64,000 nucleotides of DNA from Haliotis rubra (taxonomy: Eukaryota). Shown piece by piece: positions 6,561 through 59,439 of the stretch. The position numbers and the translations under genes were made by a program. Location: positions 868,001 through 932,000 of the forward strand of contig NW_025767290.1 in the NCBI RefSeq assembly GCF_003918875.1. Direction: 5' to 3'. The notes under the pieces are model-generated. The model saw only the letters and a list, made by a program, of their open reading frames with translations. It ran no database searches and was not told the DNA's origin. How positions within the stretch are numbered: position 1 is the first letter of the stretch; every line of letters begins with the position of its first letter.

Positions 6561-8084
6561 CGCTCCCAAAAAAAAACGCATATAGGAATTTCAACTGTAT
6601 TTTTATGTTTATTTTGAAACATCTTGTAGGCTTTATGAGTAAATGAAATATAGCGAAATTGCACACTGGGAATGCAGACTTATCCGTCTTTCGCACCAAC
6701 TCGAGGAAAGTCAGTGTGAGTGTCACATGGAAACGTGTGGTGGCGCTGAAGTCAATATCTCGTGTGACCACCGTGGGCATCCAGAACTGCACGGCATCGC
6801 CTCGGCATCGAACGAATAAGTCTCAAAATCTCGTGTTGCCCAATCGCAGCCCACTCTGCCTGTAGTGCCTGTGCGAGTTGCTGAAGTGTCTGGGGCTGAG
6901 GGTTACGGCGTCGCACCCGTCTGTCCAGGGCATCCCACAGATGTTCGATCGGGTTTAAGTCCGGTGGACTTGAGGGCCAGGGGAACACATTGATGTTGTG
7001 GTTCTGGAGGAAGTCTCTGGTGTGACGTGCTGTGTGGGGCCTGGCATTGTCCTGTTGAAACAACTCCCTCTGGCGATCAATGATTGGAAGGAGGTGTGGG
7101 CGTAGGATTTCGTCACAGTACCGTTGAGCTGTCAGGTTGCCCTGGATCATCACCAAATCACTTCTCCTAGGGCAGGTGATCCCTCCCCACATCTTAACAC
7201 TCCCCCGGCCGAATCTGTCCACCTGGGGAACGCAAGCGTCGGCGAAACGTTCACGTCGACGTCTGTACACCCGCATTCTTCAAACGCGTCGTTCCAATAG
7301 AAATCGTGATTCATCACTGAACCAGATTCTGCGCCAGTTCGGTAGGTTCCAGGCCTGAGCGTTGGTGCACCATTGAACTCGATGTCGACGATTTTGTTGT
7401 CGAAGCAGAGGGCCAAAATAATGTCTTCTGGCACGTAAACCAGCATCTCTCAACCTGTTCCTGACGGTCTGTGCAGAAAGCCTCCTCAATCCGGGTATTT
7501 GTCGAGCGGTACTGGTCGCCGTAGCTGTTCGATGACGCAGGTGATGTACCCGGATGTAGAGATCCTGCGCCGCAGCGGTCGCTCGAGGTTGCCCACTACG
7601 AGGGGCATCTGCTACCGCATTCTGCCGACGATATCTCTCCCAGAGCCGTGAAATGGTGCTTTGGTGAACATTCATGCGTCGGGCAACTGCACGTTGAGAC
7701 TGGCCAGCTTCAAGCAAACCAATGGCGATATGACGGTTGGCTTCACTTAGACGTGGCATTTTGCGTTCGTCAACAACATTCCAAATACAGTGAATAATCG
7801 ACAGACAACGATCAACCTTTCATACCCATCATTGAGACTATCTGATCCCCAAGTTTCACGTGCATTGCATGTGAATTGTGTATTCTGTGACACTAAACGC
7901 CGAAATTGAAATTCATGCTGTTAAATACGGGTATTTTACGGATGGTGCGTTTTGTTGTGATGTTTCAAAACATAAACACCATAGGACTCATAAACAGAGC
8001 AAAACCTTTTGTAAAATGAATCACGTTTTAATTCATTGCTACATGAAATTGCTATTTTAATGATGCGTTTCTTTTTTGGGAGAG
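6561..8084 (-). mobile_element. Tc1/mariner DNA transposon (DD34E), full length about 1.5 kb
   Basis: Imperfect TIRs CGCTCCCAAAAAAAAACGCAT / ATGCGTTTCTTTTTTGGGAGAG, flanked by TA at 6559-6560 and 8085-8086; contains a transposase ORF. Confidence 0.92.
6752..7759 (-). pseudogene. Tc1 transposase with one in-frame nonsense codon
   Basis: ORFs 7280-7759 and 6752-7276 are in the same frame, separated only by TGA at 7280-7282. Paired-like HTH N-terminus; FSDESRF, QQDNARPH and SPPDLNPIEHLW motifs (34 residues between D and E); GGHTRY end. Confidence 0.92.
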
Positions 8085-9440: not shown

Positions 9441-9731
9441 GTAATCAAAATGGTTGTCCTTATCATAACGCCAACAGTACTAGCGTCAAAATTCAAATAA
9501 GTTATTGTTTTGCAGAGATATGATGTGTGCACGTTTACATTTTACCTTTTTAATAATAACTCATAAATTTTGAAGCATGGCCTAACAAAAGTTTCTCTTC
9601 GCGGTCCATATGTTAAAGTCGCCTCAGATTGAAGCACCCGATCTCTAAATAATCCATGTAAAAAACCATGCAGATACTATTATACTCAAAACATATGCTG
9701 CAACTGAGATAGAGAACAAATGAATTCTTAC

Positions 9732-10098
9732 CTGATAGGTCAGCCATAGCAAGATTAAGTAACAGCAAATTCGTCATAGTTTTCATGGAAGTATTTGATA
9801 GGACAATTGTAAGGATGAGTAAGTTTCCCACAAGCGCCATCACAAACACCGGCACATACACCGCAGTGAGGAGTATATTCGGTGTCTCATCGTGCGCCTC
9901 CAGCTCGTCCTTAAAATCATCCATAATTGAAATCCAACTTCGGTTATGAGTAGTATTAAATAAATTCAAGGTTGAAGTGTTCGCATCACTAATGTGTAAA
10001 AACCAATTGAGAATTTCCGTCAACATCAGATCTTCATATGAGCGCGGCATGATTCTGACGGACTTGAATCTCTTGATGAAGTCAGCTACTGATGCCAT
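9732..10098 (-). CDS. class A (rhodopsin-like) GPCR, probable neuropeptide receptor, first coding exon (N-terminus, TM1, start of TM2)
   Basis: Sequons NTS, NTT, NRS; TM1 VYVPVFVMALVGNLLILTIV (GN motif); ICL1/TM2 MKTMTNLLLLNLAMADL (TN..L.NLA.AD); strong phase-1 donor TCAG|GTAAGA at 9732/9731. The true start could be a later Met. Downstream exons were not identified in the window. Confidence 0.88.
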
Positions 10099-37616: not shown

Positions 37617-37989
37617 NNNNNNNNNNNNNNNNNNNNNNNNNNNNNNNNNNNNNNNNNNNNNNNNNNNNNNNNNNNNNNNNNNNNNNNNNNNNNNNNNNNN
37701 NNNNNNNNNNNNNNNNNNNNNNNNNNNNNNNNNNNNNNNNNNNNNNNNNNNNNNNNNNNNNNNNNNNNNNNNNNNNNNNNNNNNNNNNNNNNNNNNNNNN
37801 NNNNNNNNNNNNNNNNNNNNNNNNNNNNNNNNNNNNNNNNNNNNNNNNNNNNNNNNNNNNNNNNNNNNNNNNNNNNNNNNNNNNNNNNNNNNNNNNNNNN
37901 NNNNNNNNNNNNNNNNNNNNNNNNNNNNNNNNNNNNNNNNNNNNNNNNNNNNNNNNNNNNNNNNNNNNNNNNNNNNNNNNNNNNNNNNN
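37617..37989. other. assembly gap
   Basis: run of N. Confidence 1.
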
Positions 37990-41801: not shown

Positions 41802-42701
41802 TCACACTTCCTGTAAAGGTATCACGTTGAAACGTCCATTAGTGTTAATCTTTGGTATAGTTTTGGACACAACACCTTCCTCGGCTGCCTCGCTCTCTGG
41901 TGTGAAACTGTCGTTTGTTTCTACGTTTGTACTCTCCGACAAGGGCGACACTTCACTACTTGAATTACCCTTGTGATATCTCACCGAATTTAATTCCATG
42001 TCTATAGGGGAATTATTTGCACCTGCCTTTAAATCTGCTGATACACTCCCCTTGTCCGTTTCATAATTCAATACTGACCCAAATGACCTTAAACTTGATG
42101 GTGTCTGGCCAGGGGGGAAGGTCACTGACTCTTCTTCTTCTTCTTCCGTTTCCGGTATAGACTCCTGTCTCTCTATGGTGAAGGCTGATATACACCTGAC
42201 GAATTCTGGTCTTCTGTGACTAAAGGTTAATGGGACTCCCTCCATTGCATCCGGTGACCCTACAGAATGAACGTCAACACCACAGCGCTTCAGGGACAAC
42301 GTTAACGGGTTCATGTCTGGCGTCATCACCGGCGTTGACGCCGCCGTGGAAGATGGAGTGTATTTCCAAGCGCTCCCATGGATGGAGTTGATGAGGTTGT
42401 GAACCGCCGAGAGCTGCCGCTTCTTTTCAAGAAGATCCCGATGCTCCTGCAACCCTTTCACAAACATATCGGTATCTCTCTCAATTGAATAACTACGACG
42501 GCGTCTCACGTAGATACCGAGGACGCCGATCACCCCAATGCCATACACCAACACAACGGCAACGGTGAACTTCATAGCGCCCTGGTGGTCATACGCCTCT
42601 GTTGTTGGCCCGGAACAAGGGTACCCTGTCGTTGTCGGTGATCCACTGCCTGTCACAGGAACACTCATATTCCCTGGTATTGCCGTTGTGTTAACACCCA
42701 T
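41802..42701 (-). CDS. intronless single-pass membrane protein, 299 aa, KCNE-like TM region
   Basis: Strong start context ACGATGG; no signal peptide; sequons NTT and NMS; TM FTVAVVLVYGIGVIGVLGIYV followed by RRRR; long Ser/Thr/Glu-rich tail ending GRFNVIPLQEV; 900-nt open frame in non-repeat DNA. Confidence 0.8.
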   Translation of the reverse strand: MGVNTTAIPGNMSVPVTGSGSPTTTGYPCSGPTTEAYDHQGAMKFTVAVVLVYGIGVIGVLGIYVRRRRSYSIERDTDMFVKGLQEHRDLLEKKRQLSAVHNLINSIHGSAWKYTPSSTAASTPVMTPDMNPLTLSLKRCGVDVHSVGSPDAMEGVPLTFSHRRPEFVRCISAFTIERQESIPETEEEEEESVTFPPGQTPSSLRSFGSVLNYETDKGSVSADLKAGANNSPIDMELNSVRYHKGNSSSEVSPLSESTNVETNDSFTPESEAAEEGVVSKTIPKINTNGRFNVIPLQEV

Positions 42702-44958
42702 CGTTGATTCCAGCCTTTCTTTATATTCTCACATCCACACGAGCAGTCTATGAAACACCACTTACGCAAATGGAGTAAATATGCCTCTCCAGTGATTGTT
42801 CCTTCCTGCAGTCTACCACATTAGCATTAGTCATCATCCAACCCGATTACGCCAAGCTTATGGAGATCTTACGAGCTTTACGTCAGAGCACCGCACACAC
42901 ACCCTCTGATCGGACAGACTTGTCCTCGTGTAACCATTCACTCAACTATGGGACAAACAATTAACGATGTCACGTGGTTCGTGTCGGCCACAGCTGGTAT
43001 CCGAGGAGAATAAGTCAGTTATACAGATCTCTATCAATCCTCCGTGAGCGCTGACCGACAAAAGGTTCTACATGGTGTGTGCTTATACATGACCTGTGGG
43101 CTAATGCGGAGCCTGATCGTATTACAGTGTTATGTTTTACAATAGGTGTATACGTCACTTGTAGGTAATGTGTGTTAGGATTGGGCCATGAAGCATAACT
43201 ACAACGCTTGAGCTGTTATAAGCAATTATGAGCAATTACTCCCAGCTTTTTGTAAAAAAAAATAAAATGTTAATGCTTTTGTTGTAAACCGCAGGTCAAA
43301 AACACTGGATGTACACCAATATTTGATAGTGGCTAAAACATAAACACAAAAATGTTTTCCACCGCGATGTATTTGATATGGATATCACTGTTGAATTGTC
43401 AACCTTAACTCTACAGTGTATAGGTGACTGTTTCCACCTCCGTATCGTTTTTGGTAACGTTTGTGATATTACTGTCAATTCACATTTTAAAATGTGTTCG
43501 GTTTTCTCACAAAATTTTAAACTTTTATGTTACAGCAGCCGTCAATTTTTCAATTCGTTTCTCTGAATTTTCAATTCAACTTTCAATTTTCAATTCGTTC
43601 ATGGATCAGTAATGTTGTTCTTCCATGTGTCCATTACTATGTTGACCAGTAGGGGCTACACTCTTGTCTATAGCATGTCCATCAAGGGAACATCTGACCA
43701 GCACTTAACCAAGGGACCGTGATTCTAAAAAAGGCAACTTGTCCTTCACGTTTGAGCCCCGTTCCCCAAACAGACAGAGAACTGAGAACCGAGACTCCCA
43801 ACGCGTTTAACTAGACTTATCCCAAACGCAACTCTGGAGTTTTTTTGTCAATCGGACAAGAGGGAGGACAATATTGATGATCTTCTAATTATTTTCAGTC
43901 AGTGTCACAGGTAAAGATCACATGCTACAGATGACCATTCAACATTTAGAAACACAATGAGTATTGTACAAGTGTACAATATCTAAATACAACGTGGCTT
44001 AAAGCAATGGACTAAATGTTTCCTAGAAGATGACAGTGTTCACTATATGCCCTGAACCACACATATTAGGATATTATACCACATTGCTTTTAACACTTGC
44101 TCTGCTTAATATACAGTGCATTAGGGCCATGTATCCATTACACAGATAAGACAAATATGATAAAAACATATTCTTAATTAGGCTCATTAACATTCATTAT
44201 TCTTCAGACGAAAACATAAATATTTGTTCCTTTCTATATTTCCTGAGAAGTACGATGTAAACCTTTAGTTTAATATAGTCACCACAACCAAACTGTTATT
44301 TCGATATTATTTTTAAAAGAAATTCAATTCTATTTTCAACTACACTGCACATGTAAAATCCATAACAGTCGACCGTCTATCTCAAAGATAGTCTGTGTGA
44401 ATATATGATATAAGTCCCCTGCTAACTATTGTTTTGTACGAGGAGCTGGTACAAAATCAATTTCTAGTCGTCTCGTGTCTTGCACATATGGTGAATTATA
44501 AACATGCAGATGTGGTGTGGATAATAGTATTCTTTTTTCATTTCAAGAAGGTTTTATTTGCTGCTGTGAATCAATGAAATCTGTATGGTGTGCTCCGGTG
44601 CATAAAGACGCGAAAATAAGTTAACTGGTAAGTCAGATTGAAATATACTTTATCGATCGTTATTCGAGGACATGAGCATGTTAACAAAGAATGAAACAAA
44701 TGACACATTGACGCCTTACCCGAGATCGCAAAATGGATATGGTGCAATTTGGAGTTACCTCCCTTGAATCGCCTGCGACATTAGTTGTGTAATGTAACGG
44801 AGCTCTCTGTGTTCACAGCCTATCTGGTGTCAACACTTATTCAGTATTCCGTTTGAACTGAAACAAAGGATAATCGATACTGGCTTATCTCTGGCATTGA
44901 CGTTTTACATATGTTAGAAATCTTATTCTCCTCACAACTCTCTATATGGTCCTTGTGG

Positions 44959-45036
44959 GCGCCTCCGTGGTGTAGTGGTTAGAGTGTCCGCCCGGAGATA
45001 CACACGCATGCACGTCGTCATATGAACGAAATATTC
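44959..45036 (+). mobile_element. SINE family C fragment (head joined to tail, next to a gap)
   Basis: GCGCCTCCGTGGTGTAGTGGTTAGAG joined to CACACGCATGCACGTCGTCATATG. Confidence 0.65.
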
Positions 45037-45242
45037 NNNNNNNNNNNNNNNNNNNNNNNNNNNNNNNNNNNNNNNNNNNNNNNNNNNNNNNNNNNNNNNN
45101 NNNNNNNNNNNNNNNNNNNNNNNNNNNNNNNNNNNNNNNNNNNNNNNNNNNNNNNNNNNNNNNNNNNNNNNNNNNNNNNNNNNNNNNNNNNNNNNNNNNN
45201 NNNNNNNNNNNNNNNNNNNNNNNNNNNNNNNNNNNNNNNNNN
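45037..45242. other. assembly gap
   Basis: run of N. Confidence 1.
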
Positions 45243-46236
45243 CTTGTTTTTCATGGGAGTGCCAAGGCTCGGCTGTGCAGGAGAGACACTAATCGATAAT
45301 TAAATGACAAATAAAGTAGCTTCCTTGTACCAGTAATAATCTCGATGACAAGAGTAAACGTGGATAACGTGTAAGGACATCTACTTATACGGCTTTAAAC
45401 CCTACCGTTGCAATTGAACGAGATGTTGTGTCAGTCATAACGACTCGTGACATACTCTCGTGACAACGACGACAATAGCCACCTCAGATGCAGATTACAC
45501 TTATGCTTACAAGATATATATTGACTTGTTATCGATTCTTATACACACCTGGACAATTTGCACGAGACATCGGAGGAATGAGAGCAGCTGAATAATATGA
45601 GTTTTTTCGCTTACAAATATCCCAATTCCTGTTTTAAAATAAGGAATACTTAGGAAGTGATGAAATGTGACTTTTGATAACGAAAGTGTCAGTTTGTATG
45701 GTGCAAACCAGTGTTAATTATTCAGTCGCAATATAATCTGAAGTTGTTTGAATGAGTTTAGACGCTACCACCACAAAAAAACCTTTTTCAATGCATATTC
45801 CCTCTCCTTTCCTCAACTGCAACACCTTAACACATGCTCAAAGGACTATTTCCGTAACAGCGCCACCTATGTGTTTCCAAAACACATTTTTATGAACTTT
45901 CAATAAAAAAAAAAGTTCGAAAGTTCACTAAGCAATAAATTATTGTATGCAATGTAGTTCATTGCTAGATTCACACACTGTCCGAGCGTAGGAATACTTT
46001 CCGGATGCGCCAGGAACTATTTTGACTCTTGTTTTATCAACCTTTTTCAATAACAAAATGACAATAAATGTTTAATCAAGTATGTAACTAAAGAACAGTT
46101 TGCTCCGTTCAATATGTTATCAAATACCTTGACAATAAAGATATTTTTGGTCTTTGGACTTTTATATTGGTTATTTGGTGATGGCACAATCTGTCATGTT
46201 GCATTTGTTGGTGCAGTAAGATCACGATTTTGCAAT

Positions 46237-46344
46237 CCAGGGCCCCGTTCCTCAAAGCGATCGTAGCGCTACGACAGTCGTAAGTCTATGTTAAAGTATG
46301 GGAGTTACGATGCGATACGATCGTTGTGAGGAACGGGGCCCTGG
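46237..46344. mobile_element. short hairpin MITE (CCAGGGCCCC termini)
   Basis: CCAGGGCCCCGTTCCTCA...TGAGGAACGGGGCCCTGG inverted repeat; related to 16127, 52014 and relics near 10800, 29200 and 35270. Confidence 0.75.
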
Positions 46345-46544
46345 TATGCTATCTAGAATGTGATAGCATCCCGGCATTATTCATATCGGTCGTAGATTGT
46401 TCCGGTGTTACATGCCGACAAACATGGCACTTGTCACTTAAACCACACACAAATGATACCTTGTATCCACAGTCTCGATGTCGCAGGAACAGCTGCCAAC
46501 GATCATCATGTCGATCCGAAACACACAAAACGCCCTTGAACGTG

Positions 46545-46946
46545 GTTTTGTTTGTTTGTTGCTTAAAGCCGCACTCAGCAATATTCCAGCTGTAAATAAT
46601 CGAGTCTGGAACAGACAATCCAGTCATCGCAACTTGAGCATGGATTTACGCAACTGGGACACGATGATATGTCAACCAAGTCAGCTAAGCTGACCACCCG
46701 ATCCCGTTAGTCGCCCCTTTCGACAAGCATGCGTTGCTGAAGATCAATTCAAATACTGACTCACTGACTGAGTTTGGTTTTACGCCGCTTTTAACAATAT
46801 TCCAGCAACATCACGGCGGGGGACACCAGAAATGGGCTTCACACATTGTACCCATGTGGGGATTCGATCCCGGGTCTTTGGCGTGACGAGCCAACGCTTT
46901 AACCACTAGGCTACCCCACCGCCCCCTTATACTGATCTTTACGGGT
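46545..46946 (-). mobile_element. family A SINE-like copy interrupted near its 5' end by a family B SINE (about 46760-46926)
   Basis: family A sequence resumes (GATCTTTACGGGT) after the B copy; ATACTGA is duplicated at the junctions. Confidence 0.8.
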
Positions 46947-47389
46947 ACCTTGAGTGTGTTGTCAAATATTGGGAGGCGTCAGTTCATACCATCTGCAGAT
47001 GTGCATTAAAACATTTAAGCCACCAAGAACAATGTCTCAGCAACGTCTCATCTTTCACTTAAATAGACTGGTGCAGCCTATTTAATGCAACCCATTTAAA
47101 CCCATCACTATATTCTCCTAAGTTTCTTCCGGATCATTAGAAAACGTAAAGTGGTAACTGTCATCTGAGGGCAGTATATTCCGAAAAAAAAAGGATATAG
47201 GTATTTCTATTTGTATATATAAATTTATATGAGAGATAAGTTTTAAGATTTGCATGTTGCATTGTACCAGCGACGAGTCGTGCAATAATGTAGGCAGTTC
47301 ATTTCTGGAAACATTATTGTTATCATTTTACAAAATAAATATTTACTATTATACTAACATTCGTATAACGCCAATATCCAGCTCAGTTG

Positions 47390-48260
47390 CTCAAAGCGCT
47401 TAGTTTTTACCTCGATGAATGGATGTCTCAAACAGCACATCGAATTATCAATCTCAACTCCCTGAGGAACATACAACCCTTGCAGCCACTAGGCGCACCG
47501 AGTTAATGTGGATTTCCCCATCCTTACGAGGTATCCATTCACAGCATAGTCACAGTACTCTCTCCACGTGTACTGCACGTTGCTGTACCCGCAACTAAGT
47601 GTGTGCACATACTCCTGTGTCCACAATGAGATCATTTACAGCTTGTTCAGCTTGACCTGATCAAGTGGATACAAATGAATTGCATGACCAGTCACAACTG
47701 GTTTGGTCTATTATTGTGAAGGGGTGCACCTTTGTCAGTTGATTGTCAATATGTCCGAACAGCCAAGACAAGGTCGCCGTTTCACATCTCAGTGTCGAGA
47801 AATCGTCAGCAATATCCTAACTTTTTTTTAAAAATGAAGCTACAAACATATTGCAGTTGAACATGAAATAGAAAACGTGATAACTGAACTGGGTGTAGAG
47901 AGTGATAGCGAGACTGAATCGGATTGTGAAAGTAACTGACGTCTGTACGTTGTAAAGTTAGTAAACCAAACAAGATACCGTATGACTGCATAAACAATTT
48001 AATTAAAACATGAAATGATTGTTTTTTTAGAAGTGTTCTTTTCCGGGACAAGTTCTGTAACGAATCCATGTATGCATGCTTCGCACGAACGCAACATTAA
48101 TAGCCTTCTCTGCTCCTCTATTTAATGAAGTTAACTCGACCTGTCGTTTGTGCCATTTGACCTTCCGGGTCATGCATATGTAGAGTAGCTCAGGTCAAGC
48201 TGAACGCACTGTACCAACGGATTCCGGGGTTCTTTTAACTGCACAGGGTCGTGTACATAG
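47390..48260 (-). mobile_element. second copy of the composite SINE (323-854 family), split by a DNA-transposon insertion
   Basis: 47440-47636 and 48212-48256 align with contiguous sequence at 440-702. Confidence 0.78.
47639..48211. mobile_element. non-autonomous TIR element with TA target duplication (Tc1/mariner-type MITE)
   Basis: TA|CAGCTTGTTCAGCTTGACCTGA ... TCAGGTCAAGCTGAACGCACTG|TA, inserted at a TA within the SINE. Confidence 0.8.
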
Positions 48261-48464
48261 TTCAAATAGTGAGTCGGTCAATGAAAGATTTGAGTATCGG
48301 GGGCGGGTTTAAACGTATTATTATGGTAAGAATCTCACTTTCGCAATGATAATGTTCCTTAGTTTGCTGGCATCTTGGTTTCACTACAGTTTTAAAAGAA
48401 CATCATTTCGACCGCTCTGAAGCATTTTTGCAATCAACGGTCATGTAAGCAGTATGACAGCTGT

Positions 48465-48622
48465 NNNNNNNNNNNNNNNNNNNNNNNNNNNNNNNNNNNN
48501 NNNNNNNNNNNNNNNNNNNNNNNNNNNNNNNNNNNNNNNNNNNNNNNNNNNNNNNNNNNNNNNNNNNNNNNNNNNNNNNNNNNNNNNNNNNNNNNNNNNN
48601 NNNNNNNNNNNNNNNNNNNNNN
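48465..48622. other. assembly gap
   Basis: run of N. Confidence 1.
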
Positions 48623-48977
48623 AACTACCTTCACACATCAAAGAGCCCCCATGGCGTGTTATCTTTGGTTTTCGCACTGCATTAGGTAGACTGAAATACT
48701 TTCCAAGATGGCGTTGATCTAAATTCAGAATACTGCGTAATAATTTGAGACTCTCTTTCCCGTTGCCCTTTTATTTTGCTTGCTTTCCGTTCTCCAACCT
48801 TATGGTCGGTGCAAGAAGTGAAAGGTTGTGTGTTCCATTAAGGTTTTTCTGCAAGAGAACCACTAGGTTTCATAACTTACTTTGATTTGAATGACAGCCT
48901 TCATGTCCACATAGTTGTTTAGTAACATTTAACGTAAGGCGACGACAGAAGACCACAACAATCATAGAAACGAGGGA

Positions 48978-49146
48978 GGGCGGTGGGGTAGTCTAGTGAT
49001 TAAAGCGTTGGCTCGTCACGCCGAAGACCCGGGTTCGAATCCCCACATGAGTACAATGAGTGAAGCCCATTTCTAGTGTCCCCCGCCTTGATATTGCTGG
49101 AATATTGCTAAAAGCGGCGTAAAACCAAACTCAGTCAGTCAGTCAG
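48978..49146 (+). mobile_element. SINE family B copy
   Basis: TSD TAGAAACGAGGGA. Confidence 0.88.
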
Positions 49147-51456
49147 TAGAAACGAGGGATAGTGCACGAAGCGTGCATAAAATCTCCGTATATGCAAAAC
49201 GCCAATCTGTTCATTTCAAACGTCCCATTCTGCAGCCACGTTGCCAATGACAAGCGACGCCGCTAAAACGATTAAAAAGGCTTTATATGTTCGTATAATC
49301 ATTATTCGTGGTGGTCAGATCAAATATGGTTTCCCCTACTGCAATTAATATCACGAACGCCTCAATTATTGAGAGCTATAAGTACTTGCTGCACATTGCA
49401 AGTACCTAAAAGGATTTAGCTGAATTATAGATTGGTCCATTGTAACTTGTGTACTTACTCGAGCGAGGAGCCTTGATGGGTTCTGTTGAAACACTGTCGA
49501 CAATTCTGATCACAGAAGCGCGGATATTATTACTGCAGCAACTCACACTATAGTGTCAATTTAGGAGGCCTTTTCAATCTTTTATGGGTTTATCGGAGGA
49601 TAACAATCACAAATTCTATGCCATCGTGTAGCGAATGTTGATGGAGTTGCGCCTTGACGCAAGGTCAACACTTTTCGGGAAGTAGTTCAGATTATTAAGT
49701 CTTTCAGCTTTCAAGTTTGATTGACGTCAGTCTGATCATTTCAAAATTGTACACTAGTAACCCATTTTATATACTTGTGTACTGGAACAATTTCGTTCTC
49801 TGTCACACTGGCAGAGACTCCGGAGACAACAGATCCAAGAATCTGTTCTTTGAGGACGTAAGAATCCCTTCCATTGGCGTGGGTGGATGCAATTCGAGGT
49901 TTGCAAGCCCTGTTTCCACTGAACCATTGTGCACCATTCTCTCACTCAGTACAATAAAATTTGGCGTCTGGAATGTTTCATTTATTTAATAGCATTTACA
50001 AACCTGCAAACGTCGGTGTAACATGCTTATAAAATTATGGTATCTTTATATATCATCCCATGACCTTTAAATACCAGACACTAAAGCATCTAACCAGATT
50101 CCTATGATTCCTTGTCCCTGGGTTCTTCGAAGGTTACAAAATGGAAAAGTGCATTGCCTCCTAAAATCAAATCCTGAATATTTCACTCCTGACTGAATAG
50201 AAATTTAAAGAAAGCACATTATACGAACAGTGGAAAAATTGATTAATTCAAGAACGAAATTAAATTACTCAACGCTTAACATTGAGATATTCAATGCGGC
50301 ACTGATGAGAATTATTCACATCACTAGGGTTCTATAAATATTCAACCTGACAAGCATTCTGTAATCATTCGTTAATCGAAGCAAGGTGTCCCAGGTCACT
50401 GTACCTTTTTCTGACAAATTACTTTGAACACGTGTGCAGCGTCACTGCACACGAGGGCACGGATGTGCAATGGCATTCCGTTGACCCTTGTGGAAAAAGA
50501 TCTTTAAAAACAAAACGGTAATATCCGATCATTCCTTTTTTCTAACAAATCTGAGATCCTGTCCTAACAGGTGGGGCATCAAGAACGGATAAACACATTG
50601 TACAGTTATACATGAGGAATACTTGCTTCTTGAATACACAATGCCATTTAGAAAGTGGTCAAATGTTACACATGAAATATTTGGGATTACACTTTCTCAG
50701 CAATGTACAGATTAGCTGCCTGACTTTGAGAGTGCGGGTTCGAATCCCGAATGGAGCTCCACCCAACAAAAATACTACACTCTGTACTTTACTGAGAAAG
50801 TGTAATCCCAAATATTTCATGTGTTAAACTTGTTTGATGTTGCCGAAGGTAATATGTGATCGGTGAGTCGAATGTTTTGGGTATGTTGCCGGTTAGAATT
50901 GTTAAAGGGTTTAATAAACTACTATACCTTTAAAGAAAGTATACAACTATCTGATACGAGGCATAAACGTGAAACCAACAAATATGATTCTGCGATGGTA
51001 ATGTTGTTACTTGGAAATATTTTTTTCATTTAATTTGAAATTTAACAAAATCGATTATTTTAAGATTCTGTAAAGATTCTGGAATTTTTTTATACATAAA
51101 GGGGTACGCGCATGTCATCTCACATTTCATCAAGACCACAATCTATTAAGATCGATATTTCCATCCTTGCCTGTTTCACTTGCATAATCACCGTAGACGA
51201 ACATATTTATTATTCACAGTGTGGTCATTACCTCTGACATTTTGTAACATAACACCATTGTGATTGCACCGCCATTGTAATTATTTTGCAGCAAATTTTA
51301 AAGATTTGTTAACCATGTCACATCTTTGGTTGCACACGAAATACTCTTTAACTTCTGGTTCTCAATATAGACATCGACTCTTGAGAGTTTATATTAGATT
51401 CAGCGATGGCAGCATAATACCGTTATGCAAACGGTGTCAGTATTTCTTGAATTTTG

Positions 51457-52480
51457 CTACGGATCACCATTCTGAATGTAAATACGTACAAGTTCCATCT
51501 CCACCTGTTGATATAGCCAAAAACAACATTTCACGAAGAAATATTCAATGTAAATAAGTGTCTGCGTGGTTGCCAAGGGAAGATTGTTCCATTCTTCAGT
51601 AAGAGCATTGTCGAGTTCCTTCAGATTTGCTGGAATGACGGGGCGTCGTGAGAGGGCTATCTGCACAGTTGATGTCTGGTGATTGGGCTGGTCACTCCAT
51701 GCGGTCAATGATATCCTGCTAAGTAAGCATCAACTACCCAGCTATGTTACTTGAGGATGGCGGCCGGCCAAACACAATGTGCTCCCAATAACAAACACTT
51801 GTAGTCGTACCCTGCTACAGGACATGGATATAGGTTCTCCCCGCTTAACTGATTCCACCTGAAATTATCATTTGCACCCCCTCCATAGGGGTAATATTCG
51901 TCTATGTTGGAAAACTAACATTCTTCTCCTCCACTTCGCAATGGCCACCTTGGGACATGACGATCTGTGAAGTCTAGACAGGATATCGATTCCTCAGTGA
52001 ATAGACCTAGAGTTCCGGGCCTCCTTTCACAAAGCACTAAGGTGATTGTAAGTCACTAAGGTAACCTTAGAGCAATGTTAAAGAATGGGAGTTAAGGTTA
52101 ACCTTAGTAAAGGTTGCTTCGTGAAAGGAGACCCAGTTCTGTTACGTCCAACTGATGTGGTTTCGATGACAGGAGACCAGCCTCAACGACAGCAGTACTA
52201 TCTGAATAGAGACATTTCTCAGGTCATTTCTGAGTGTCGTGGCAGTCACGAACGATGACGTCTTCCTGCGTTCCGGATAAACCTAATCTTCCCATTATAT
52301 GGTGGAACGCTATCGACCACCTGCATGTGGTAGCTGATCAAGACGTCGGGTATCAGTTCAATACCCTACACGTTGGCGGACTGTTGGTCCAGCTTGAAGC
52401 ATGCCTACGCAGCTGCTTAATTACTTGTATTCGATCGTCCAACGACCTATTGACGCAGATGGGACTTAAGTACTTTCGGT
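51457..52480 (-). mobile_element. highly decayed Tc1 transposase relic, with a hairpin MITE at about 52014-52135
   Basis: AVGMLQAG (N-terminal HTH) near 52400 and PANLKELDNALTEEWNNLP...TLI (C-terminal) near 51600. Confidence 0.6.
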
Positions 52481-53623
52481 TGTAACAAACGTTGTGGTAC
52501 GTGTGCTCTCTGATTGTGATGTGTTACGATTCTATAAAGTTTAATAACATCCAGTTTTTAAGTGTATAGTTTCTTTCGCTGAGCAGGTATATGGTTATCT
52601 GGTGTTCTCAAACATTGGGTTTTCGTCAACATGCTTTGGTTTATGACTTACAGGAAACGTAATTTGCAGCAAAGGCACGTGTACATTAGAAGTCGCAGCT
52701 GGCTATGAAAAGAATATTAAGGCACACGTATAGACTTCGTCTCTTTATATATTGTTTTTGTAATATTTTAACTAATCGGAATTTTGTTCCCTACGGGTGC
52801 TTATATCAGTTTCAGAATCTTGCTGCAAATCACAATATTGCTTTCACGATGATGTCATGAAGAAGAAGCATGAAGAATCTGATAACATTTCCCAATTCAT
52901 ACGAAAACCTCTGAATGTGAGTGAGTTAATGAATATTGTTTAACGCCGAAAATCACCGGTATTCCAGCAACACCGAAGCTGTCTGTGAGACAATCACAAA
53001 ATACTAGAACTATACGTCGTTGGTTGGTACAATGACCACGCGATATTGTCGCATGGTGTAATGAAACTGGCTTGGGTTCAAGGCCGCCATGCACAACCCG
53101 TATTCAAGCAATATAAGGGAGTGTCTGGTTAATGTGGGATGAAAATCCGGAATGATTAAGAGCTCAGACGTGTACTACTCTGGTGAAACCCACAAGCACG
53201 GATCTGGTGCTGAAAAACATAAAAACATAATAAAAAAGAACCTGGATTTGAACAAACTATGATAGGTGTCTGGCGTGCTCAGAAGACAAACTTCACAATT
53301 ACTGTGCCCTTGACGACTGGGCCAGTCGTGTGACCGTACCCTGCTCTGCAATCCGTGTTTCTTTAATAATGTGCATTGTACAATGCTCACTTACACGACG
53401 CCGTTTCACTGTGAACTGCTTGAAAAAGAGAGATTACATCGATCGACAAAATGTTCGTTGCCATGACGAAATCGTATTCCGTACACTAAGTTAATATATA
53501 AATGAACTACGTATAACGAATTACGTTATAACGAACTACGATTCTACCGAACTAAAATAAGTGTCCCCTTTGAGTTCGTTACAACCGAACTTAACTGTAT
53601 TTATCCACTTGTGCACCGCTAGG

Positions 53624-53850
53624 ACCCGTGAAGATCCAGGTTAGAATCGGTCTGCAGTAACCCATCTTTGTCGTAAGAGGCAACTAACGGGATCGGGTGG
53701 TCAGACTCGCTGAGTTGGTTGAGACATGTCATCATATCTCAATTGAGTAGATCGATGCTCATGCTGTTGATCACTGGATTGTCTGATCCAGTCTCGTTGG
53801 AATTAGTTGGAATTCTGCTGAATGTGGTGTTAACCAACCACCAACCAACC
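53624..53850 (+). mobile_element. SINE-like family A copy
   Basis: starts ACCCGTGAAGATCC. Confidence 0.8.
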
Positions 53851-54080
53851 ACGTACACCGCTATACATGGAGTGAGTGACGCTCAACACCGCATCACCAA
53901 TGTTGCAGCTATTCTCAGCCAGCCTACACATAAAGGCTTGTCGCAAAACCACTGATCACTTGCAATGACATTACAAAATAGCGTGGCCTTATTTATCAGT
54001 TTATCAAAATATGGAATGTAATTGATTATGATGACCTGGTTAATGTACATGTATTCATCTGTATGCTTCGAAATAATGCA

Positions 54081-54354
54081 ACCCGTGAAGATCCGGGGTA
54101 GAATAGGTCTTCAGCAACCCATGTGCTTGCCATAAAAGGCGACTATGCTTGTCGTAAGAGGCGAACTAACGGGATCGGGTGGTCAGTTTCGCTGACTTGG
54201 TTGACACATGTCATCGGTTCCCAATTGCGTAGATCGATGCTCATGATGTTGATCACTGGATTGTCTGGTCCAGACTCGATTATTTACAGACCGCCGCCAT
54301 ATAGCTGGGATATTGCTGAGTGCGGCGTAAAACTAAACTCACTCACTCACTCAC
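54081..54354 (+). mobile_element. SINE-like family A copy (full length, duplicated internal hairpin)
   Basis: ACCCGTGAAGATCCGGGG...(CTCA)n; imperfect TSD GAAA.AATGCA. Confidence 0.88.
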
Positions 54355-54912
54355 TGGAAAGAATGCATTCTGTTTATGTAAATTCCTGTACATCTTGATT
54401 TAACAATGCATTTGTAAGTGGTTCATTATTCATCAATACGTAAATACCTTGTCTTATGTGGACATGGTTTGCTGCAATGGTTTCTGCAGGTGAATAATTG
54501 CCTTGTACTTGCATGTGTTTGTGACGAGCGAAACTGATGTGGCGGGATACGCTCACCCATATAGTAGTGGTTTCTGTACACATGCTTATAAGTCTGAATT
54601 GTTTTATGAACTATGTTTAGTCAAATATTCTACAGATATTTTATCGCTATTGTTCGTATTTGTATTGTTTCTTTTCTTGTGTGTTTTTCTTCATTCCATT
54701 TGTCAGTTTGCTGTAAACACCGTCAAGTGGACCGTCGCCACACATCTATTTCTGGATCAATAAGATCGAATATGTGGTAGGAGTCAGTTAGTGTGAGACC
54801 AAATATCGGTGATGAGTTATATCGATAATCTCATATAATAAGAGAGGAATATCGATAAGCCCAAATCGTTGCAGTACTAGGAAATAGCCTATTTTCCACT
54901 GATTTACGCACC

Positions 54913-55163
54913 TGAGTGAGTGAGTGAGTTTAGTTTTACGCCACACTCAGCAATATTCCAGCTATATGGCGGCGGTCTGTAAATAATCGAATCTGTATCA
55001 GACAATCCAGTGATCAACAGCATGAGCATCGATCTGCGCAATTGGGAACCGATGACATGTATCAACCAAGTCAGCAAGCCTGACCACCCGATCCTGTTGT
55101 TTGTCGCCTCTTACGACAAGCATGGGTTACTGAAGGTTCATTCTAACCCGGACCTTCACGGGT
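54913..55163 (-). mobile_element. SINE-like family A copy
   Basis: full length; imperfect TSD TGATTTAC.CAC. Confidence 0.88.
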
Positions 55164-55164
55164 G

Positions 55165-55680
55165 ATTTACCCACTAGAAATAGAAGAAACCATAGAGACT
55201 GCTTCATACTTAGATCTAATAATCAAGATTCTCACAGTGCCAAACGCTTTGCACACACATGTATGACAAGAGGAATTGCTTCCACATTTCGACAGTCAGC
55301 TTTCCTATAATTCCGTGCAATATTCCAGGAGCTCCAACCTTTCGGACTATATTTCACAACTTTTTAGATAGACTCTAGCATGCTCTTTGTGGCAAGATTT
55401 CAAAGAAGGTAAGACGGCTCTGGCGGAGTCTAAGGGTCTTTGATCACGTTTACAGCTTTCAAGGCCTCAGTAAATGTTTCAAAACGTTTCGTGGCAGACC
55501 CGTGGTTGACATTTACAACTGACTTGTGTGATATTTCCCCGTGTACTTTGAGCGACTTGGGCTTGAATGTGTTTGTGAAGGTGCAACTCTGATGGCAAGA
55601 GACGCCTACCGTTCAGACACCAGGCGCCATCTCTGTTTTACAGAGATTGATGGATGCTTGCTCATGATATGACCGAATCG
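55165..55680 (+). pseudogene. Penelope-like RT relic 2
   Basis: YPLEIEETIETASYLDL...MYDKRNCF...VSFP...NIPGAPTFG...ACSLWQDF. Confidence 0.7.
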
Positions 55681-57281
55681 TATGATTAACGATATTTTTA
55701 TGAACATTAAAATGTATTTGACCCTCTTCACCAATCAGTTACCAATACACTGTCACTCATAAGTACACATAGCCTGTAATATTGATTAAAAATGTAAAAA
55801 CATGATGTGATGGATTATGCTGTCGCCGGGGAAAGAGATTTTGTTTTGTTTCAAAACGTTTCTTTCTTGCAAGTAGCGGATCCTCTGAACTTATCTGGAC
55901 GGATTGTCTGGGTTGTTCATAAGGAGAGAGTTGCTATGCGGCGTCGGGCTGTAAATACAATTTGGGATAAGTGTTATAATGGCGCTGCTTCCGGTACATG
56001 CATATCCTTTGCGCAAACACCTGGTGTCACCGCTGATCTTCAACGGTCTAGTCAGATCATTTTCACAGCTTTTTTGCCCTCATTACAACATGGAATCTGT
56101 TTCTAAAGACTCTCAACACCCTGTCTATTGTTTTGCACGTTATGTGTTATTACGTTAATAGACGTTACTTCTGTTTATAGTCTACTTGACAATCTAAGTT
56201 GCACAAAGCGTCTTGTTTGTAAGAAACTAAACTCCAAAATGATGTCAGTCTTTTTTAAACTTTACCACTGGATGAATCCAAGGGGCAAGTACAGGGTGCC
56301 GACAAACCAAGAATGATAATCAGGATGAATCTTGGATTCGAACCCACTATCATCAAATACTGGCACGTCCAAAGGCCGCAACTCTATACAGCCAATTCCA
56401 GCGCCTCGGCGGATTGTCATCTAGATACGTAGCCCTATTATGGACATAAATCCGATGACGTCCCAACACAGTACAGTGAGTCTGTTTTTAAGACGTTTAA
56501 ATCGACAATATATTTCGACAATACAACCCGTCAATCCTCACGCGAGAGGATGCGTGGTTTAACCGTATGGTGTTATTGAATGCATCAGCTTTCAAACAAT
56601 GCATTAAGAATAATTGTCACATACTGTCACCATAGAATCTAAATCTACCCACAACCATACGAGACACGACAGTTAACAAGCTACGCGCATTGGTATCATC
56701 TGGTTCCCTGAACTCGCGGTAGCAAGCGGGATCGATAAAACCGTCCGATCAATACTAGCGTGTTCGCATGCTCCTGTAGCAGTGATCGCTCGGTTCTACT
56801 ATAACCATTTTGCTTCGTCTTAATTGGATTTCCAGACCTCAAAGTGTGTTTACAACGCTGTTCTCCAAAAAGCGTCTTAACTACAGATGGAGTGAAAATC
56901 TGCTCGTAGCACTAATATGGTTGACGATAAAATTGAAGGACATCGTCCGGTTTCCGCTCCTATCAGTGACAGCTGCGCGGGCACACACTGACGACAGGAA
57001 GTAGTTCTTGTCGTCTGATAACCCAAGACGATGTTGTGATGACTGGACGTCACATATGCTCCGACTTGTTATATTTCTTCTCGTTTTGTGAAGGTCACAC
57101 AACCCCTATCGCTGACGTCAGGTCGTCCTGGGATAAGCTTATTGTGGCATGGTGTCTCTGACGGCTTCCGACGAGAGAGTATGTTGTGTCGCCGTGGCGG
57201 GATAATCTATACCTGAACTGTGGTGACATTTCCCCGCGTACCGTTCCAGTTCCTTTGCGTGTGACACTGCAGTTCACAGTG

Positions 57282-57782
57282 ATGTCAATTCGGAACGGTT
57301 TACCGAATGGAACCATTTTCTTCCACAATGCCAAAAGTCCCGTTGTTGTGGTCAACGGGACTGTGATACAGCTGCAGATTAAAGAGCCCTACAGAGACAG
57401 TCAACTGAACGAGCTCCTCTATGTCATCATCGTCATTGTTTTCTACGCAACAGCATTGATGACACTCATCATTACACAAATACGTCGACAACGCCGTGAA
57501 GGACAGGACATTGACTACTACGACGAATACCTTCAACGGAACCAGGAGGTAAAACGCACCTGTCAAACCGCTGTTAAAATGATCAAGAAGCAGGACGCAC
57601 CCCCCGTACCCCCAACCCTCAACCTACCCGCTGACGGGGAGGGGTCGGGGACTACATCGACTGAAGAGGATGGTGGGAATGATGCTAACAGAAGCAAGAA
57701 ATTCCAGAGGGACCGCTCTCCAATTCTTAGAGAGCGGTCACCAATGCTTGAAAGCATACCGGACGAGGAACCTGTAGAATAA
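57282..57782 (+). CDS. intronless single-pass membrane protein, 166 aa, KCNE-like
   Basis: First ATG of the 57186-57782 frame is at 57282. Two NGT sequons; no signal peptide; TM LLYVIIVIVFYATALMTLIITQI followed by RRQRRE..DIDYYDEYL; Pro/acidic tail ending LESIPDEEPVE; followed by a long AT-rich 3'UTR-like region with AATAAA at 59261. Confidence 0.8.
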   Translation: MSIRNGLPNGTIFFHNAKSPVVVVNGTVIQLQIKEPYRDSQLNELLYVIIVIVFYATALMTLIITQIRRQRREGQDIDYYDEYLQRNQEVKRTCQTAVKMIKKQDAPPVPPTLNLPADGEGSGTTSTEEDGGNDANRSKKFQRDRSPILRERSPMLESIPDEEPVE

Positions 57783-59439
57783 GTATCATAATGTTATAAC
57801 TTTGTTGCTTTGTCTGTGGTGCTCTGATTAAATCATGGAGTAAAACGCTTGATATCGAGCAATAATATCCTGAATCTCACAGCTTGTGTCTAAAGCTGTA
57901 GCTGCAAATCTAGCCAAATAACGAGGCTGTCCTAACCCTTCTTCCTGGGACCAGCGCCATGAGGTGTCTGGAACCTCGTAACCGATAATAGTTTTCATTA
58001 TCCAGTCCTAAACTGTCAAATAGGATAATCCGGGAGAGCGACACAGCAGACTGGCTGTTACAGACTAGCCTTGGGGTAGAAAGCTGCAGACAGTGAATAA
58101 CAAGTGAGCAGGACAGCCACATCATATTTTCAACAGTTTCCCCATGTAATGGATTTGTCTACATTTATACTCGGATCACAATGTTCATACAATCAGACGG
58201 TGCAGTCATCAGATTCATGATTGAGAAGAGACCTGTTGATGCCATTAAAACAGCATATCAATTTGGGAGTATGCATGTTAACAGAGATTGGTTCGGCTTA
58301 GTGATGTGTGCTAATATTTTCTACGTTGTGTTAATCAACAGGGGTATAACTATATGCACTGACAGAACATTTTATCGATTGACAAAACAACATGGCTGTT
58401 ATGAGGATACCTCTTTGTAGTGCTGTGTGTTGTCACTCAACCTGTCCCATCTACTGGTAGTACCTCAGTGGTAGTGTTAACACGGGTCATTAATCCACAA
58501 GTTAAACAGAATTCTTTCTCAGCGCCAAATTACCATCTGTAAATGAAACTTCTTGCATTGTTAATTAACAAATTCCAAATATTACTGGCTACATATTAAT
58601 TACACTGATGTTGTGATAACATGTTGGCGAGGTCACCATTTTCTTGAAATCGAAATGCAGAAGATTCTCAAAATATTAAATATAAAAATATAAAATATTT
58701 ATCAATTTATATCTCTACTTTTTATAGCGGTGATTATGATGCCCCTATGTTTTTAATATTATTAACATTGATATTTGAATAGCACGTTGGAAAGGTCACT
58801 ATTTTTATAATTGAAATTGAACAGAAAATGAATGGCTCTTAATCAATGCTCTTCATCAAAGTAAAACAACAGTGATCATGATGTCCCCGTGTTTTTATAG
58901 CTGTAATATATTTCCTATGAAAACACAAAACTGAAGAACGTTTATTTTGTATAACGGTCCTATATTTTTCAACATTTCTGGTACCGTTACATGCATATTA
59001 CAGATATGTTACAGAGTATTTCATCATTTGATTACAATACTTATAAATAGAAAACATATAATTGCATGAAACTGGAACTGAAAATTACTCGACCACATTG
59101 ACGTGATTTAATGTCACTGTGTGAAAAGCATGTTATTTTAAACACAATTAAATTCAATTGATATGTGAAAAGAAAGCTCTGTCTGTTTTAGATTTGAGCT
59201 TTTAGTGTTGTAAATCTATTCAACTGAACCATTTTGTCAAGTGGTACTGCATTGTAATATAATAAATTATATAACAACGTCCATTTCAGAGACACTGTTG
59301 TGTTTCAAAAATGCCAGCTAGAGAAATCAATACAAATAATTTGATCTTCGTTACCGAAATGAATATATTTACATAATATTATGCTTCTTTGTATGCCATT
59401 GTCTTTATGGCGAAAATGAAACACATAAATGTTCAGGTA

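What the first reader, a model, noticed from the sequence alone, without database searches (positions are those of the whole stretch)
41802..57782. Divergent pair of intronless KCNE (MinK/MiRP)-like genes in an invertebrate genome
Seen: two single-exon ORFs on opposite strands, with ATGs about 14.6 kb apart and head-to-head. Both encode proteins without a signal peptide, with a short N-glycosylated N-terminus, one TM and a basic juxtamembrane stretch. Established: KCNE subunits have this type III topology, their coding region is one exon, human KCNE1 and KCNE2 are linked on opposite strands, and sequence-recognisable KCNEs are generally regarded as vertebrate-restricted. Inference: both TM regions align without gaps to recalled KCNE sequences, so this may be an unannotated lophotrochozoan cluster of Kv/KCNQ auxiliary subunits. 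An alternative is GPCR accessory proteins (MRAP-like topology), since a neuropeptide GPCR lies about 32 kb away.
Basis: partly seen in the sequence, partly recalled or inferred. Interest (0 to 1): 0.85.

Follow-up and report, generated by a model that had tools for sequence, protein, structure and literature searches.

The report
KCNE-like channel subunit genes in abalone
Two small single-pass membrane protein genes in an abalone genome belong (one firmly, one probably) to the KCNE family of potassium-channel helper subunits, which the literature says has not been found in invertebrates.

Summary
ORF A (41802-42701, minus, 299 aa) and ORF B (57282-57782, plus, 166 aa) are intact, head-to-head ORFs. 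Each has two N-terminal N-glycosylation sequons, one hydrophobic segment and a basic stretch after it. The two assembly gaps lie between the ORFs, not inside them.

ORF B is a real gene. It is conserved across gastropods with a nearly invariant transmembrane and juxtamembrane core. An exhaustive profile search extends the family to bivalves, an annelid and amphioxus. Seven of 20 scanned relatives pass Pfam's own cut-off for ISK_Channel (KCNE). A profile of the whole family hits only KCNE1, KCNE2 and KCNE3 among 177,635 solved-structure sequences. ORF B alone stays below the Pfam cut-off.

ORF A is also a real gene (dN/dS 0.22-0.26), found in gastropods and scallops. Its tie to the same superfamily is weaker: hhalign gives 81% probability, and no permuted control reached the observed score.

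ORF A and ORF B are not detectably paralogous when compared directly. Their adjacency was not found outside abalone. Channel modulation is inferred, not shown. [quoted passage not shown]

The scan holds a first-reader note on a similar candidate on another piece of this genome.

The parts
57282..57782 (+). ORF B: single-exon coding sequence of a 166-aa KCNE-like protein, stop codon included
   Evidence: It is called as a 166-aa product in assembly GCA_003918875.1. Orthologues in Gigantopelta and Patella are also single exons.
57396..57563 (+). ORF B conserved core, residues 39-94: pre-TM D-S-x-L-N-E, the transmembrane helix, the basic anchor RRQRRE, and D-Y-Y-D-E-Y-L-Q-R-N...T-C
   Evidence: 37 columns are invariant across 31 gastropod sequences, nearly all of them in this core. 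This region aligns to the KCNE1/KCNE2 TM and post-TM segment and to Pfam ISK_Channel positions 26-86.
57306..57362 (+). ORF B N-terminal sequons N9-G-T and N25-G-T (presumed extracellular)
   Evidence: N25 and T27 are invariant in the 17-sequence alignment. In the profile alignment this sequon lines up with the N-T-T sequon of KCNE2.
57738..57770 (+). ORF B C-terminal motif S-P-M-L-E-S-I-P-D-E-E, conserved across gastropods
   Evidence: Its function is unknown.
57091..58596 (.). Stretch covered by contigs of three small runs that the tool guesses to be RNA. It is consistent with a transcript comprising ORF B, at least 190 nt upstream and about 800 nt downstream.
   Evidence: X1-X3 cover only this stretch and a high-copy repeat. 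They show no depth over 55235-56998 apart from a trace at 55970-56116 in X1 and X2. One X1 contig runs unbroken over 57091-57420. The RNA label is a guess by the tool.
41802..42701 (-). ORF A: single-exon coding sequence of a 299-aa single-pass membrane protein, a probable divergent KCNE-superfamily member
42456..42593 (-). ORF A conserved core, residues 37-82: Y-D-x-x-G-A-M-K-F-T-V-A-V-V-L-V-Y-G-I-G-V-I-G, the basic anchor, and F-V-K
   Evidence: These are the 47 columns that hhalign matches to the ORF B superfamily profile. G41, A42, F45, T46, A48, V49, V50, G59 and G62 are invariant in 14 sequences.
45037..45242 (.). Assembly gap between the two genes
   Evidence: It is not inside either ORF.
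48465..48622 (.). Assembly gap between the two genes
   Evidence: It is not inside either ORF.

Best explanation
ORF B encodes a member of an old, previously undescribed invertebrate branch of the KCNE (MinK/MiRP, Pfam ISK_Channel) superfamily. It is a small protein with a glycosylated N-terminus outside the cell, one transmembrane helix, and a basic anchor followed by a Tyr-rich helix inside. By analogy with vertebrate KCNEs, the helix would sit in the cleft between a voltage-sensor domain and the pore domain of a Kv channel (KCNQ or another Kv). The juxtamembrane segment would act on the gate and so tune gating or trafficking. ORF A encodes a second, longer single-pass protein of a mollusc-wide family. 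It is probably a very divergent branch of the same superfamily, with a Gly-rich helix and a long disordered tail. The two genes are not recent duplicates, and their head-to-head adjacency is so far seen only in abalone. What is shown: both genes are real, ORF B is homologous to KCNE, and the coding regions are single exons. What is inferred: the topology, the channel partner and the effect on gating.
For: ORF B:
- It has gastropod-wide orthologues with a nearly invariant TM and juxtamembrane core.
- An exhaustive hmmsearch with a gastropod-only profile over 1.84 billion proteins gave 51 hits at E<=1e-3. They include bivalves, the annelid Owenia, amphioxus and Patella paralogues.
- ISK_Channel is the top Pfam hit for 14 of the 20 relatives scanned. 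It reaches Pfam's own cut-off of 22.1 bits for P0049, P0051, P0058, P0059, P0066, P0067 and P0068.
- A 41-sequence family profile hit only KCNE1 (E 3.8e-4), KCNE2 (2.2e-3) and KCNE3 (0.05) in the whole PDB sequence set.
- ORF B scores 58.8 bits against an HMM built only from the distant group that carries most of the cut-off-passing Pfam hits. The best of 1000 decoys scored 17.3.
- Protein language-model features place ORF B next to KCNE4 (score 0.95, 220 of 256 features shared). All ten best named hits are ISK_Channel.
- The coding region is a single exon in the window, Gigantopelta, Patella and the ENA contigs.
- Four of five between-individual differences in ORF B are synonymous.

ORF A:
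- dN/dS is 0.22-0.26 overall and 0.065 over residues 30-115.
- The family is present in Lottia, Nucella, Bulinus, Pecten and Mizuhopecten.
- hhalign of its family against the ORF B superfamily gives probability 81% and E 1.2e-5 over 47 columns. None of 200 within-segment permutations reached that score.
- The ORF A family HMM scores P0066, which passes the Pfam KCNE cut-off, at 19.0 bits. None of 1000 decoys reached that.
- The nearest named language-model clusters for ORF A residues 1-115 are ISK_Channel, at 0.88-0.89.
Against: - ORF B alone is below Pfam's cut-off (14.8 bits), and RCR, a fungal single-pass family, scores as well.
- The gastropod-only profile finds no KCNE in the PDB. The link therefore depends on intermediate sequences, a route that can drift for short hydrophobic domains.
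- The Pfam scores of the relatives sit only 0.2-3.4 bits above the cut-off.
- ORF A has no Pfam or PDB hit to KCNE. Its own score against the superfamily HMM is 8.7 bits, reached by 2 of 1000 decoys. Its language-model scores are under 0.9.
- Transcription rests on runs whose RNA label is a guess and which were selected because they hold this stretch.
- No functional data exist for any member.
- Ciona KCNQ1 is poorly modulated by mammalian KCNEs, so a KCNQ partner cannot be assumed.
Confidence: 0.7

Rival explanations
1. Only ORF B is KCNE-like. ORF A belongs to an unrelated mollusc-specific family of single-pass membrane proteins that happens to lie next to it.
For: - Direct comparison of the two families shows nothing (probability 0.2%).
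- ORF A has no Pfam or PDB KCNE hit.
- Its helix is Gly-rich, and its family has a 2-residue indel inside the TM, unlike the gap-free ORF B superfamily.
- The adjacency is not conserved.
Against: - hhalign probability rose from 24% to 81% as the ORF A family was enlarged.
- None of 200 permutations reached the observed score.
- The ORF A family HMM finds P0066 at 19 bits, against a decoy maximum of 8.7.
- ORF A is the second-best of 981 six-frame pieces of the window for the superfamily HMM.
- The nearest named language-model clusters are ISK_Channel.
Confidence: 0.3
2. Neither protein is a true KCNE relative. The matches reflect convergence of short type III membrane anchors: an aromatic-rich helix, a polybasic stop-transfer stretch and an acidic Tyr-rich segment. 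The partners are something other than Kv channels.
For: - Sub-threshold hits to RCR, COX6C and other single-pass families appear beside ISK_Channel.
- The Pfam scores are marginal.
- The matched region is only about 50-80 residues.
Against: - All nine PDB sequences with E<=10 are KCNEs, out of 177,635 that include many single-pass proteins.
- The register is gap-free through the TM, with one 1-residue gap in the post-TM segment, and the aromatic and basic positions are shared.
- The alignment extends into the sequon region and the post-TM segment.
- An amphioxus member bridges towards vertebrates.
- Segment-shuffled decoys that keep composition score far lower.
Confidence: 0.12
3. The proteins are GPCR accessory proteins (MRAP/RAMP-like) serving the rhodopsin-type receptor about 32 kb away.
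For: The only support is a similar gross topology and a GPCR-like exon at 9613-10098.
Against: - No MRAP or RAMP family appears in any Pfam scan at E<=10 or in the language-model neighbours.
- Transposon-like ORFs and assembly gaps separate the GPCR exon from ORF A.
- The Tyr-rich motif lies after the TM here. In MRAP it lies before the TM (recalled from memory, not tested).
Confidence: 0.03

Closest known systems
Vertebrate KCNE1-6 and lamprey KCNE0 (Pfam PF02060 ISK_Channel)
   Same: - Small proteins with a glycosylated N-terminus, one TM helix and no obvious signal peptide.
- A Tyr at the start of the helix and an F-[YF]-[AG] triplet eight residues later.
- A basic anchor after the helix.
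- An acidic residue followed by aromatic-x-x-Tyr-[IL] about 12-17 residues after the helix. In the HMMER alignment ORF B D78 and Y83-L84 line up with KCNE1 D76 and Y81-I82.
- A single coding exon.
   Different: - ORF B has Gln where KCNEs and the distant invertebrate group have Tyr at the inner end of the helix.
- The post-TM motif is D-Y-Y-D-E-Y-L-Q-R-N rather than D-P-[FY]-x-V-Y-I.
- There is a conserved C-terminal S-P-M-L-E-S-I-P-D-E-E motif with no KCNE counterpart.
- The mid-helix 'triplet' position reads A-L-M, not F-T-L or T-V-G.
- ORF B is below the Pfam cut-off.
- ORF A has a Gly-rich helix and a 230-residue tail.
Caenorhabditis elegans MPS-1 to MPS-4 (MiRP/KCNE-like subunits of KVS-1 and KHT-1)
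   Same: They are invertebrate single-pass proteins described as KCNE-like partners of Kv channels. A nematode cluster is among the nearest language-model neighbours of ORF A.
   Different: The literature describes them as nematode-specific. I did not test any sequence relation to ORF A or ORF B. No nematode protein was identified among the named hits.
Uncharacterised invertebrate proteins of the same superfamily (for example Patella P0075 and P0076, Owenia P0052, Branchiostoma P0062)
   Same: They share the helix register and post-TM motif. All are unnamed in their source databases. Several pass the Pfam ISK_Channel cut-off.
   Different: Many end in S/T-x-V (PDZ-ligand-like) tails that ORF B lacks. 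They form paralogous lineages distinct from the ORF B type.

Membership tests
KCNE (Pfam PF02060 ISK_Channel) | Whole-protein score at or above Pfam's gathering cut-off of 22.1 bits | tested here: not met
   ORF B scores 14.8 bits (E 0.024). ORF A has no hit. Seven relatives of ORF B do meet it, at 22.3-25.5 bits.
KCNE (Pfam PF02060 ISK_Channel) | Profile-level sequence homology to experimentally characterised KCNE1/2/3 | tested here: met
   For ORF B's superfamily profile, all 9 PDB hits are KCNEs and the best is KCNE1 at E 3.8e-4. ORF B is tied to that profile at 58.8 bits. This is not met for the ORF A family profile on its own.
KCNE (Pfam PF02060 ISK_Channel) | One TM helix, N-terminus outside with N-glycosylation sequons, basic residues on the cytoplasmic side, no cleavable signal peptide | tested here: met
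   Hydropathy and sequon scan of both ORFs. The signal peptide was judged from hydropathy only. Glycosylation itself cannot be tested here.
KCNE (Pfam PF02060 ISK_Channel) | Coding region within a single exon | tested here: met
   Both ORFs are uninterrupted. ORF B orthologues are single exons. An X1 contig is collinear over 57091-57420. The Patella homologue of ORF A is annotated with an intron.
KCNE (Pfam PF02060 ISK_Channel) | Conserved post-TM segment (acidic residue, aromatic, then Tyr-Ile/Leu) that contacts the channel gate region | tested here: inconclusive
   The HMMER alignment places D-Y-Y-D-E-Y-L opposite D-P-F-N-V-Y-I of KCNE1 with a 1-residue gap. ORF A has only F-V-K at that place.
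KCNE (Pfam PF02060 ISK_Channel) | Assembles with and changes the gating or trafficking of KCNQ or other Kv channels | not testable with these tools
   No multimer modelling or electrophysiology is available here.
MRAP/RAMP GPCR accessory proteins | Sequence match to the MRAP or RAMP families | tested here: not met
   No such family appears at E<=10 in the Pfam scans of either ORF or their families.

The most novel reading that the evidence does not exclude
KCNE-type auxiliary subunits predate vertebrates. The bilaterian ancestor already had one, and molluscs keep at least three or four paralogous lineages: the ORF B type, short PDZ-tailed types, and long-tailed types that include ORF A. These modulate invertebrate KCNQ or other Kv channels. 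[quoted passage not shown]
Probability: 0.5. Interest if true: 0.75.

Novelty: new variant of a known kind. Interest (0 to 1): 0.66.

Why it matters
KCNE subunits shape cardiac repolarisation and epithelial potassium recycling in vertebrates. Current papers state that no kcne gene has been identified in invertebrates (Kasuya et al. 2024, PMC11659587; the 2026 lamprey KCNE0 preprint). A conserved family in molluscs, annelids and amphioxus that reaches KCNE by profile searches would move the origin of this subunit class back to early bilaterians. It would also give concrete, short, intronless genes to co-express with invertebrate Kv channels. The near-invariance of the ORF B helix across gastropods suggests a tightly packed, conserved partner, and that partner could be identified. 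Some members already carry automatic ISK_Channel labels, so the data have been visible without being interpreted.

Tried and rejected
- The gastropod-only profile (A1) found no KCNE in the PDB. A broader family alignment was needed.
- hhalign of the two narrow family alignments (A1 against A2) showed no relation. Only after both families were enlarged did a signal appear.
- The Atlas structure search for ORF B is meaningless: its own model has pTM 0.23, and the hits were unrelated bacterial and Ig folds at TM below 0.5. I did not run AlphaFold or fold searches, because a single helix gives no discriminating fold match.
- The look-up of encoding contigs on the ENA hits P0068 and P0049 gave no organism names. 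Most cluster look-ups were unnamed too, so the phyletic range rests on a few named members.
- The first permutation script timed out. It was rerun in parallel.
- ORF B could not be looked for next to ORF A in H. asinina and H. cracherodii. The 10 kb flank limit is shorter than the 14.6 kb spacing. Conservation of the pair within Haliotis, and the correctness of the two scaffold joins, therefore remain untested.
- Weak tblastn matches of ORF A relatives at 17.1 kb of the Gigantopelta locus correspond to no ORF.
- Literature searches for KCNE together with molluscs or amphioxus found nothing relevant.
- I did not type vertebrate KCNE sequences from memory, so no direct profile-profile comparison with a vertebrate KCNE alignment was made.


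Full report
**Observation**

The window holds ORF A at 41802-42701 (minus strand, ATG start, 299 aa) and ORF B on the plus strand. ORF B is open from a GTG at 57186. The ATG at 57282 gives 166 aa and matches the N-termini of its orthologues. The two start codons are 14,581 bases apart and the genes point away from each other.

Each protein has:
- one hydrophobic segment (A about residues 43-65, B about 45-65);
- two N-x-S/T sequons before that segment;
- a polybasic run after it.

The N runs at 45037-45242 and 48465-48622 lie between the genes, and neither ORF contains an N. Frames are therefore not in question. The spacing and orientation depend on two scaffold joins that I could not check. 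No ORF of 110 aa or more lies between the genes. The window matches assembly GCA_003918875.1, contig QXJH01000059.1, where ORF B is called as a 166-aa product. The closest relatives of ORF A are from Haliotis asinina (84%) and H. cracherodii (77%), so this is an abalone genome.

**ORF B on its own**

- Pfam gives ISK_Channel (the KCNE family) at E 0.024 and 14.8 bits, under the cut-off of 22.1. The fungal single-pass family RCR scores about the same.
- Among solved structures the best single-sequence hit is KCNE2 at E 0.49.
- Taken alone, this evidence is not significant.

**The ORF B family**

- ORF B has orthologues throughout gastropods (Gigantopelta, Patella, Lottia, Littorina, Biomphalaria, Lymnaea, Elysia and others). 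All are unnamed and none carries a Pfam domain.
- The stretch from D39 to C94 is almost invariant across these lineages, and so is a C-terminal motif S-P-M-L-E-S-I-P-D-E-E. Such conservation of a helix fits tight packing against a conserved partner.
- A gastropod-only profile finds no KCNE in the PDB, so a wider family was needed.

**Wider relatives**

An exhaustive hmmsearch with the gastropod profile over 1.84 billion representative proteins gave 51 hits at E<=1e-3. The named ones are:
- unionid bivalves (P0037);
- the annelid Owenia (P0052);
- amphioxus (P0062);
- two further Patella paralogues (P0075, P0076).

All 41 sequences chosen for alignment A4 align without gaps through the helix and the post-TM segment. 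A Tyr, a Val and a second Tyr are invariant, and F, A, Y and E are nearly invariant.

**The link to KCNE**

- Of 20 relatives scanned against Pfam, ISK_Channel was the top hit for 14. Seven reached the curated cut-off: P0049, P0051, P0058, P0059, P0066, P0067 and P0068, at 22.3-25.5 bits.
- P0049 and P0051 are tied to the gastropod profile at E 1.8e-16 and 1.1e-14 in the whole library.
- An HMM built only from the distant group scores ORF B at 58.8 bits. The best of 1000 decoys, shuffled within segments so that composition and architecture are kept, scored 17.3.
- A profile of the 41-sequence alignment, searched against all 177,635 distinct PDB sequences, returned nine sequences at E<=10. All nine are KCNE1, KCNE2 or KCNE3 (KCNE1 3.8e-4, KCNE2 2.2e-3, KCNE3 0.05).
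- Those alignments run from the sequon region through the helix into the post-TM segment.
- Protein language-model features independently put ORF B next to a KCNE4 cluster (0.95). They also place it next to a mollusc cluster in which a quarter of members carry ISK_Channel.

I take ORF B to be a KCNE-superfamily member, with about 85% confidence in the homology.

**Gene structure, expression and selection for ORF B**

- The coding region is one exon here, in Gigantopelta and in Patella. It is also one exon on the ENA contigs that carry P0068 and P0049.
- Three small runs of the same species, which the tool guesses to be RNA, cover only 57091-58596 and a high-copy repeat. They show no depth over 55235-56998 apart from a trace at 55970-56116 in X1 and X2. 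A whole-genome-like run covers nearly every bin.
- This fits a transcript with at least 190 nt of 5' leader collinear with the genome and about 800 nt of 3' sequence. The RNA label is a guess, and the runs were selected for holding this stretch.
- Four of the five differences between individuals inside ORF B are synonymous. The fifth lies in the tail.

**ORF A**

The first search found only two Haliotis orthologues and a Patella homologue. A profile search added Lottia, Nucella, Bulinus, Pecten, Mizuhopecten and unnamed contigs. The conserved part comprises Y-D-x-x-G-A-M-K-F-T-V-A-V-V-L-V-Y-G-I-G-V-I-G, a basic anchor, and a post-TM F-[VIL]-K followed by a basic helix. The tail is variable. 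dN/dS against the two Haliotis orthologues is 0.26 and 0.22, and 0.065 over residues 30-115, so ORF A is a real gene.

Evidence against a KCNE tie for ORF A:
- It has no Pfam hit and no KCNE hit in the PDB, alone or as a family.
- It shows no direct similarity to the gastropod ORF B family.

Evidence for a distant tie:
- hhalign against the 41-sequence superfamily rose from 24% (4 sequences) to 81% probability (E 1.2e-5, 47 columns) with 14 sequences.
- Two hundred within-segment column permutations gave a mean score of 18.2 (sd 4.8, maximum 37.9) against the observed 39.7. The reversed alignment gave 14.5.
- The ORF A family HMM scores P0066, a protein that passes the Pfam KCNE cut-off, at 19.0 bits. 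The maximum of 1000 decoys was 8.7.
- ORF A itself scores 8.7 bits against the superfamily HMM, reached by 2 of 1000 decoys. It is the second-best of 981 six-frame pieces of the window.
- The nearest named language-model clusters for ORF A residues 1-115 are ISK_Channel, at 0.88-0.89. That is below the level the tool treats as more than a lead.

I rate kinship of ORF A with the superfamily at about 60%.

**Is it a cluster?**

The two proteins are far too different to be recent tandem duplicates.
- In Patella caerulea the ORF B orthologue lies at 35.03 Mb and the ORF A homologue at 18.03 Mb of the same chromosome-sized record. The ORF A homologue there is annotated with an intron.
- In Lottia, Nucella and Bulinus the two families sit on records of different length.
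- No ORF A relative lies within 10 kb of the Gigantopelta ORF B orthologue.
- Within Haliotis the 10 kb flank limit did not reach far enough to test the arrangement.

The resemblance to the human KCNE1/KCNE2 arrangement is therefore unsupported as a conserved feature.

**Mechanism (inferred)**

By analogy with KCNE1 and KCNE3 in their KCNQ1 complexes, the ORF B helix would lie between a voltage-sensor domain and the neighbouring pore domain. The post-TM segment would act near the S4-S5 linker and the gate.

In the HMMER alignment, ORF B D78 lies opposite KCNE1 D76, and ORF B Y83-L84 lie opposite KCNE1 Y81-I82. From general knowledge rather than any test here, D76 is the site of a long-QT mutation. 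The mid-helix triplet that sets the direction of the KCNQ1 effect reads A-L-M in ORF B.

The KCNQ, EAG and Shaker channel families are ancient (abstract), so partners exist in molluscs. The partner is unknown, however, and Ciona KCNQ1 responds poorly to mammalian KCNEs.

**Comparison with the literature**

Kasuya et al. [quoted passage not shown] Searches for KCNE together with molluscs or amphioxus found no relevant paper. Some family members already carry automatic ISK_Channel labels. The scan also holds an unverified first-reader note on a KCNE-like candidate with a PDZ tail on another piece of this genome, which fits the S/T-x-V tails I saw in the distant group.

**Verdict**

- The KCNE reading is well supported for ORF B through family profiles.
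- The KCNE reading is probable but unproven for ORF A.
- A conserved gene pair is not supported.
- Channel modulation is inferred only.

Noticed in passing
window 54900-55160: A very high-copy repeat. Summed contig depth is 1e4 to 5e6 in all four runs, with many internal joints and loose ends.
   Followed up: no
window 6752-7759 (-): Two adjacent ORFs (174 and 159 aa) whose translations look like the two halves of a Tc1/mariner-type transposase.
   Followed up: no
window 11608-13653 (-): Three consecutive ORFs (232, 302 and 165 aa) that look like pieces of a reverse-transcriptase-bearing retroelement.
   Followed up: no
window 9613-10098 (-): An ORF with N-terminal sequons and a rhodopsin-type GPCR TM1-TM2 look.
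   Followed up: no
proteins P0059, P0065, P0073, P0075 and others: Many distant members of the KCNE-like superfamily end in S/T-x-V, a PDZ-ligand-like tail. ORF B-type proteins instead end in an acidic I-P-D-E-E motif. A first-reader note (s1-329576) reports such a PDZ-tailed candidate elsewhere in this genome.
   Followed up: partly
L007 and L008 (Patella caerulea JAZGQO010000008.1): The ORF B orthologue and the ORF A homologue lie on the same chromosome-sized record, 17 Mb apart. This is possibly a remnant of old linkage. The ORF A homologue spans 2.1 kb for 329 aa, so it is annotated with an intron.
   Followed up: partly
window 57729-57770, ORF B residues 150-163, and the aligned orthologues: The tail carries a short tandem duplication of R-[DE]-R-S-P-[IM]-L just before the conserved L-E-S-I-P-D-E-E end. 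Hygrophilan snails have a similar doubled K-S-P-M unit.
   Followed up: no
window 5729-5893 and 37617-37989: Two further assembly gaps lie outside the finding.
   Followed up: no
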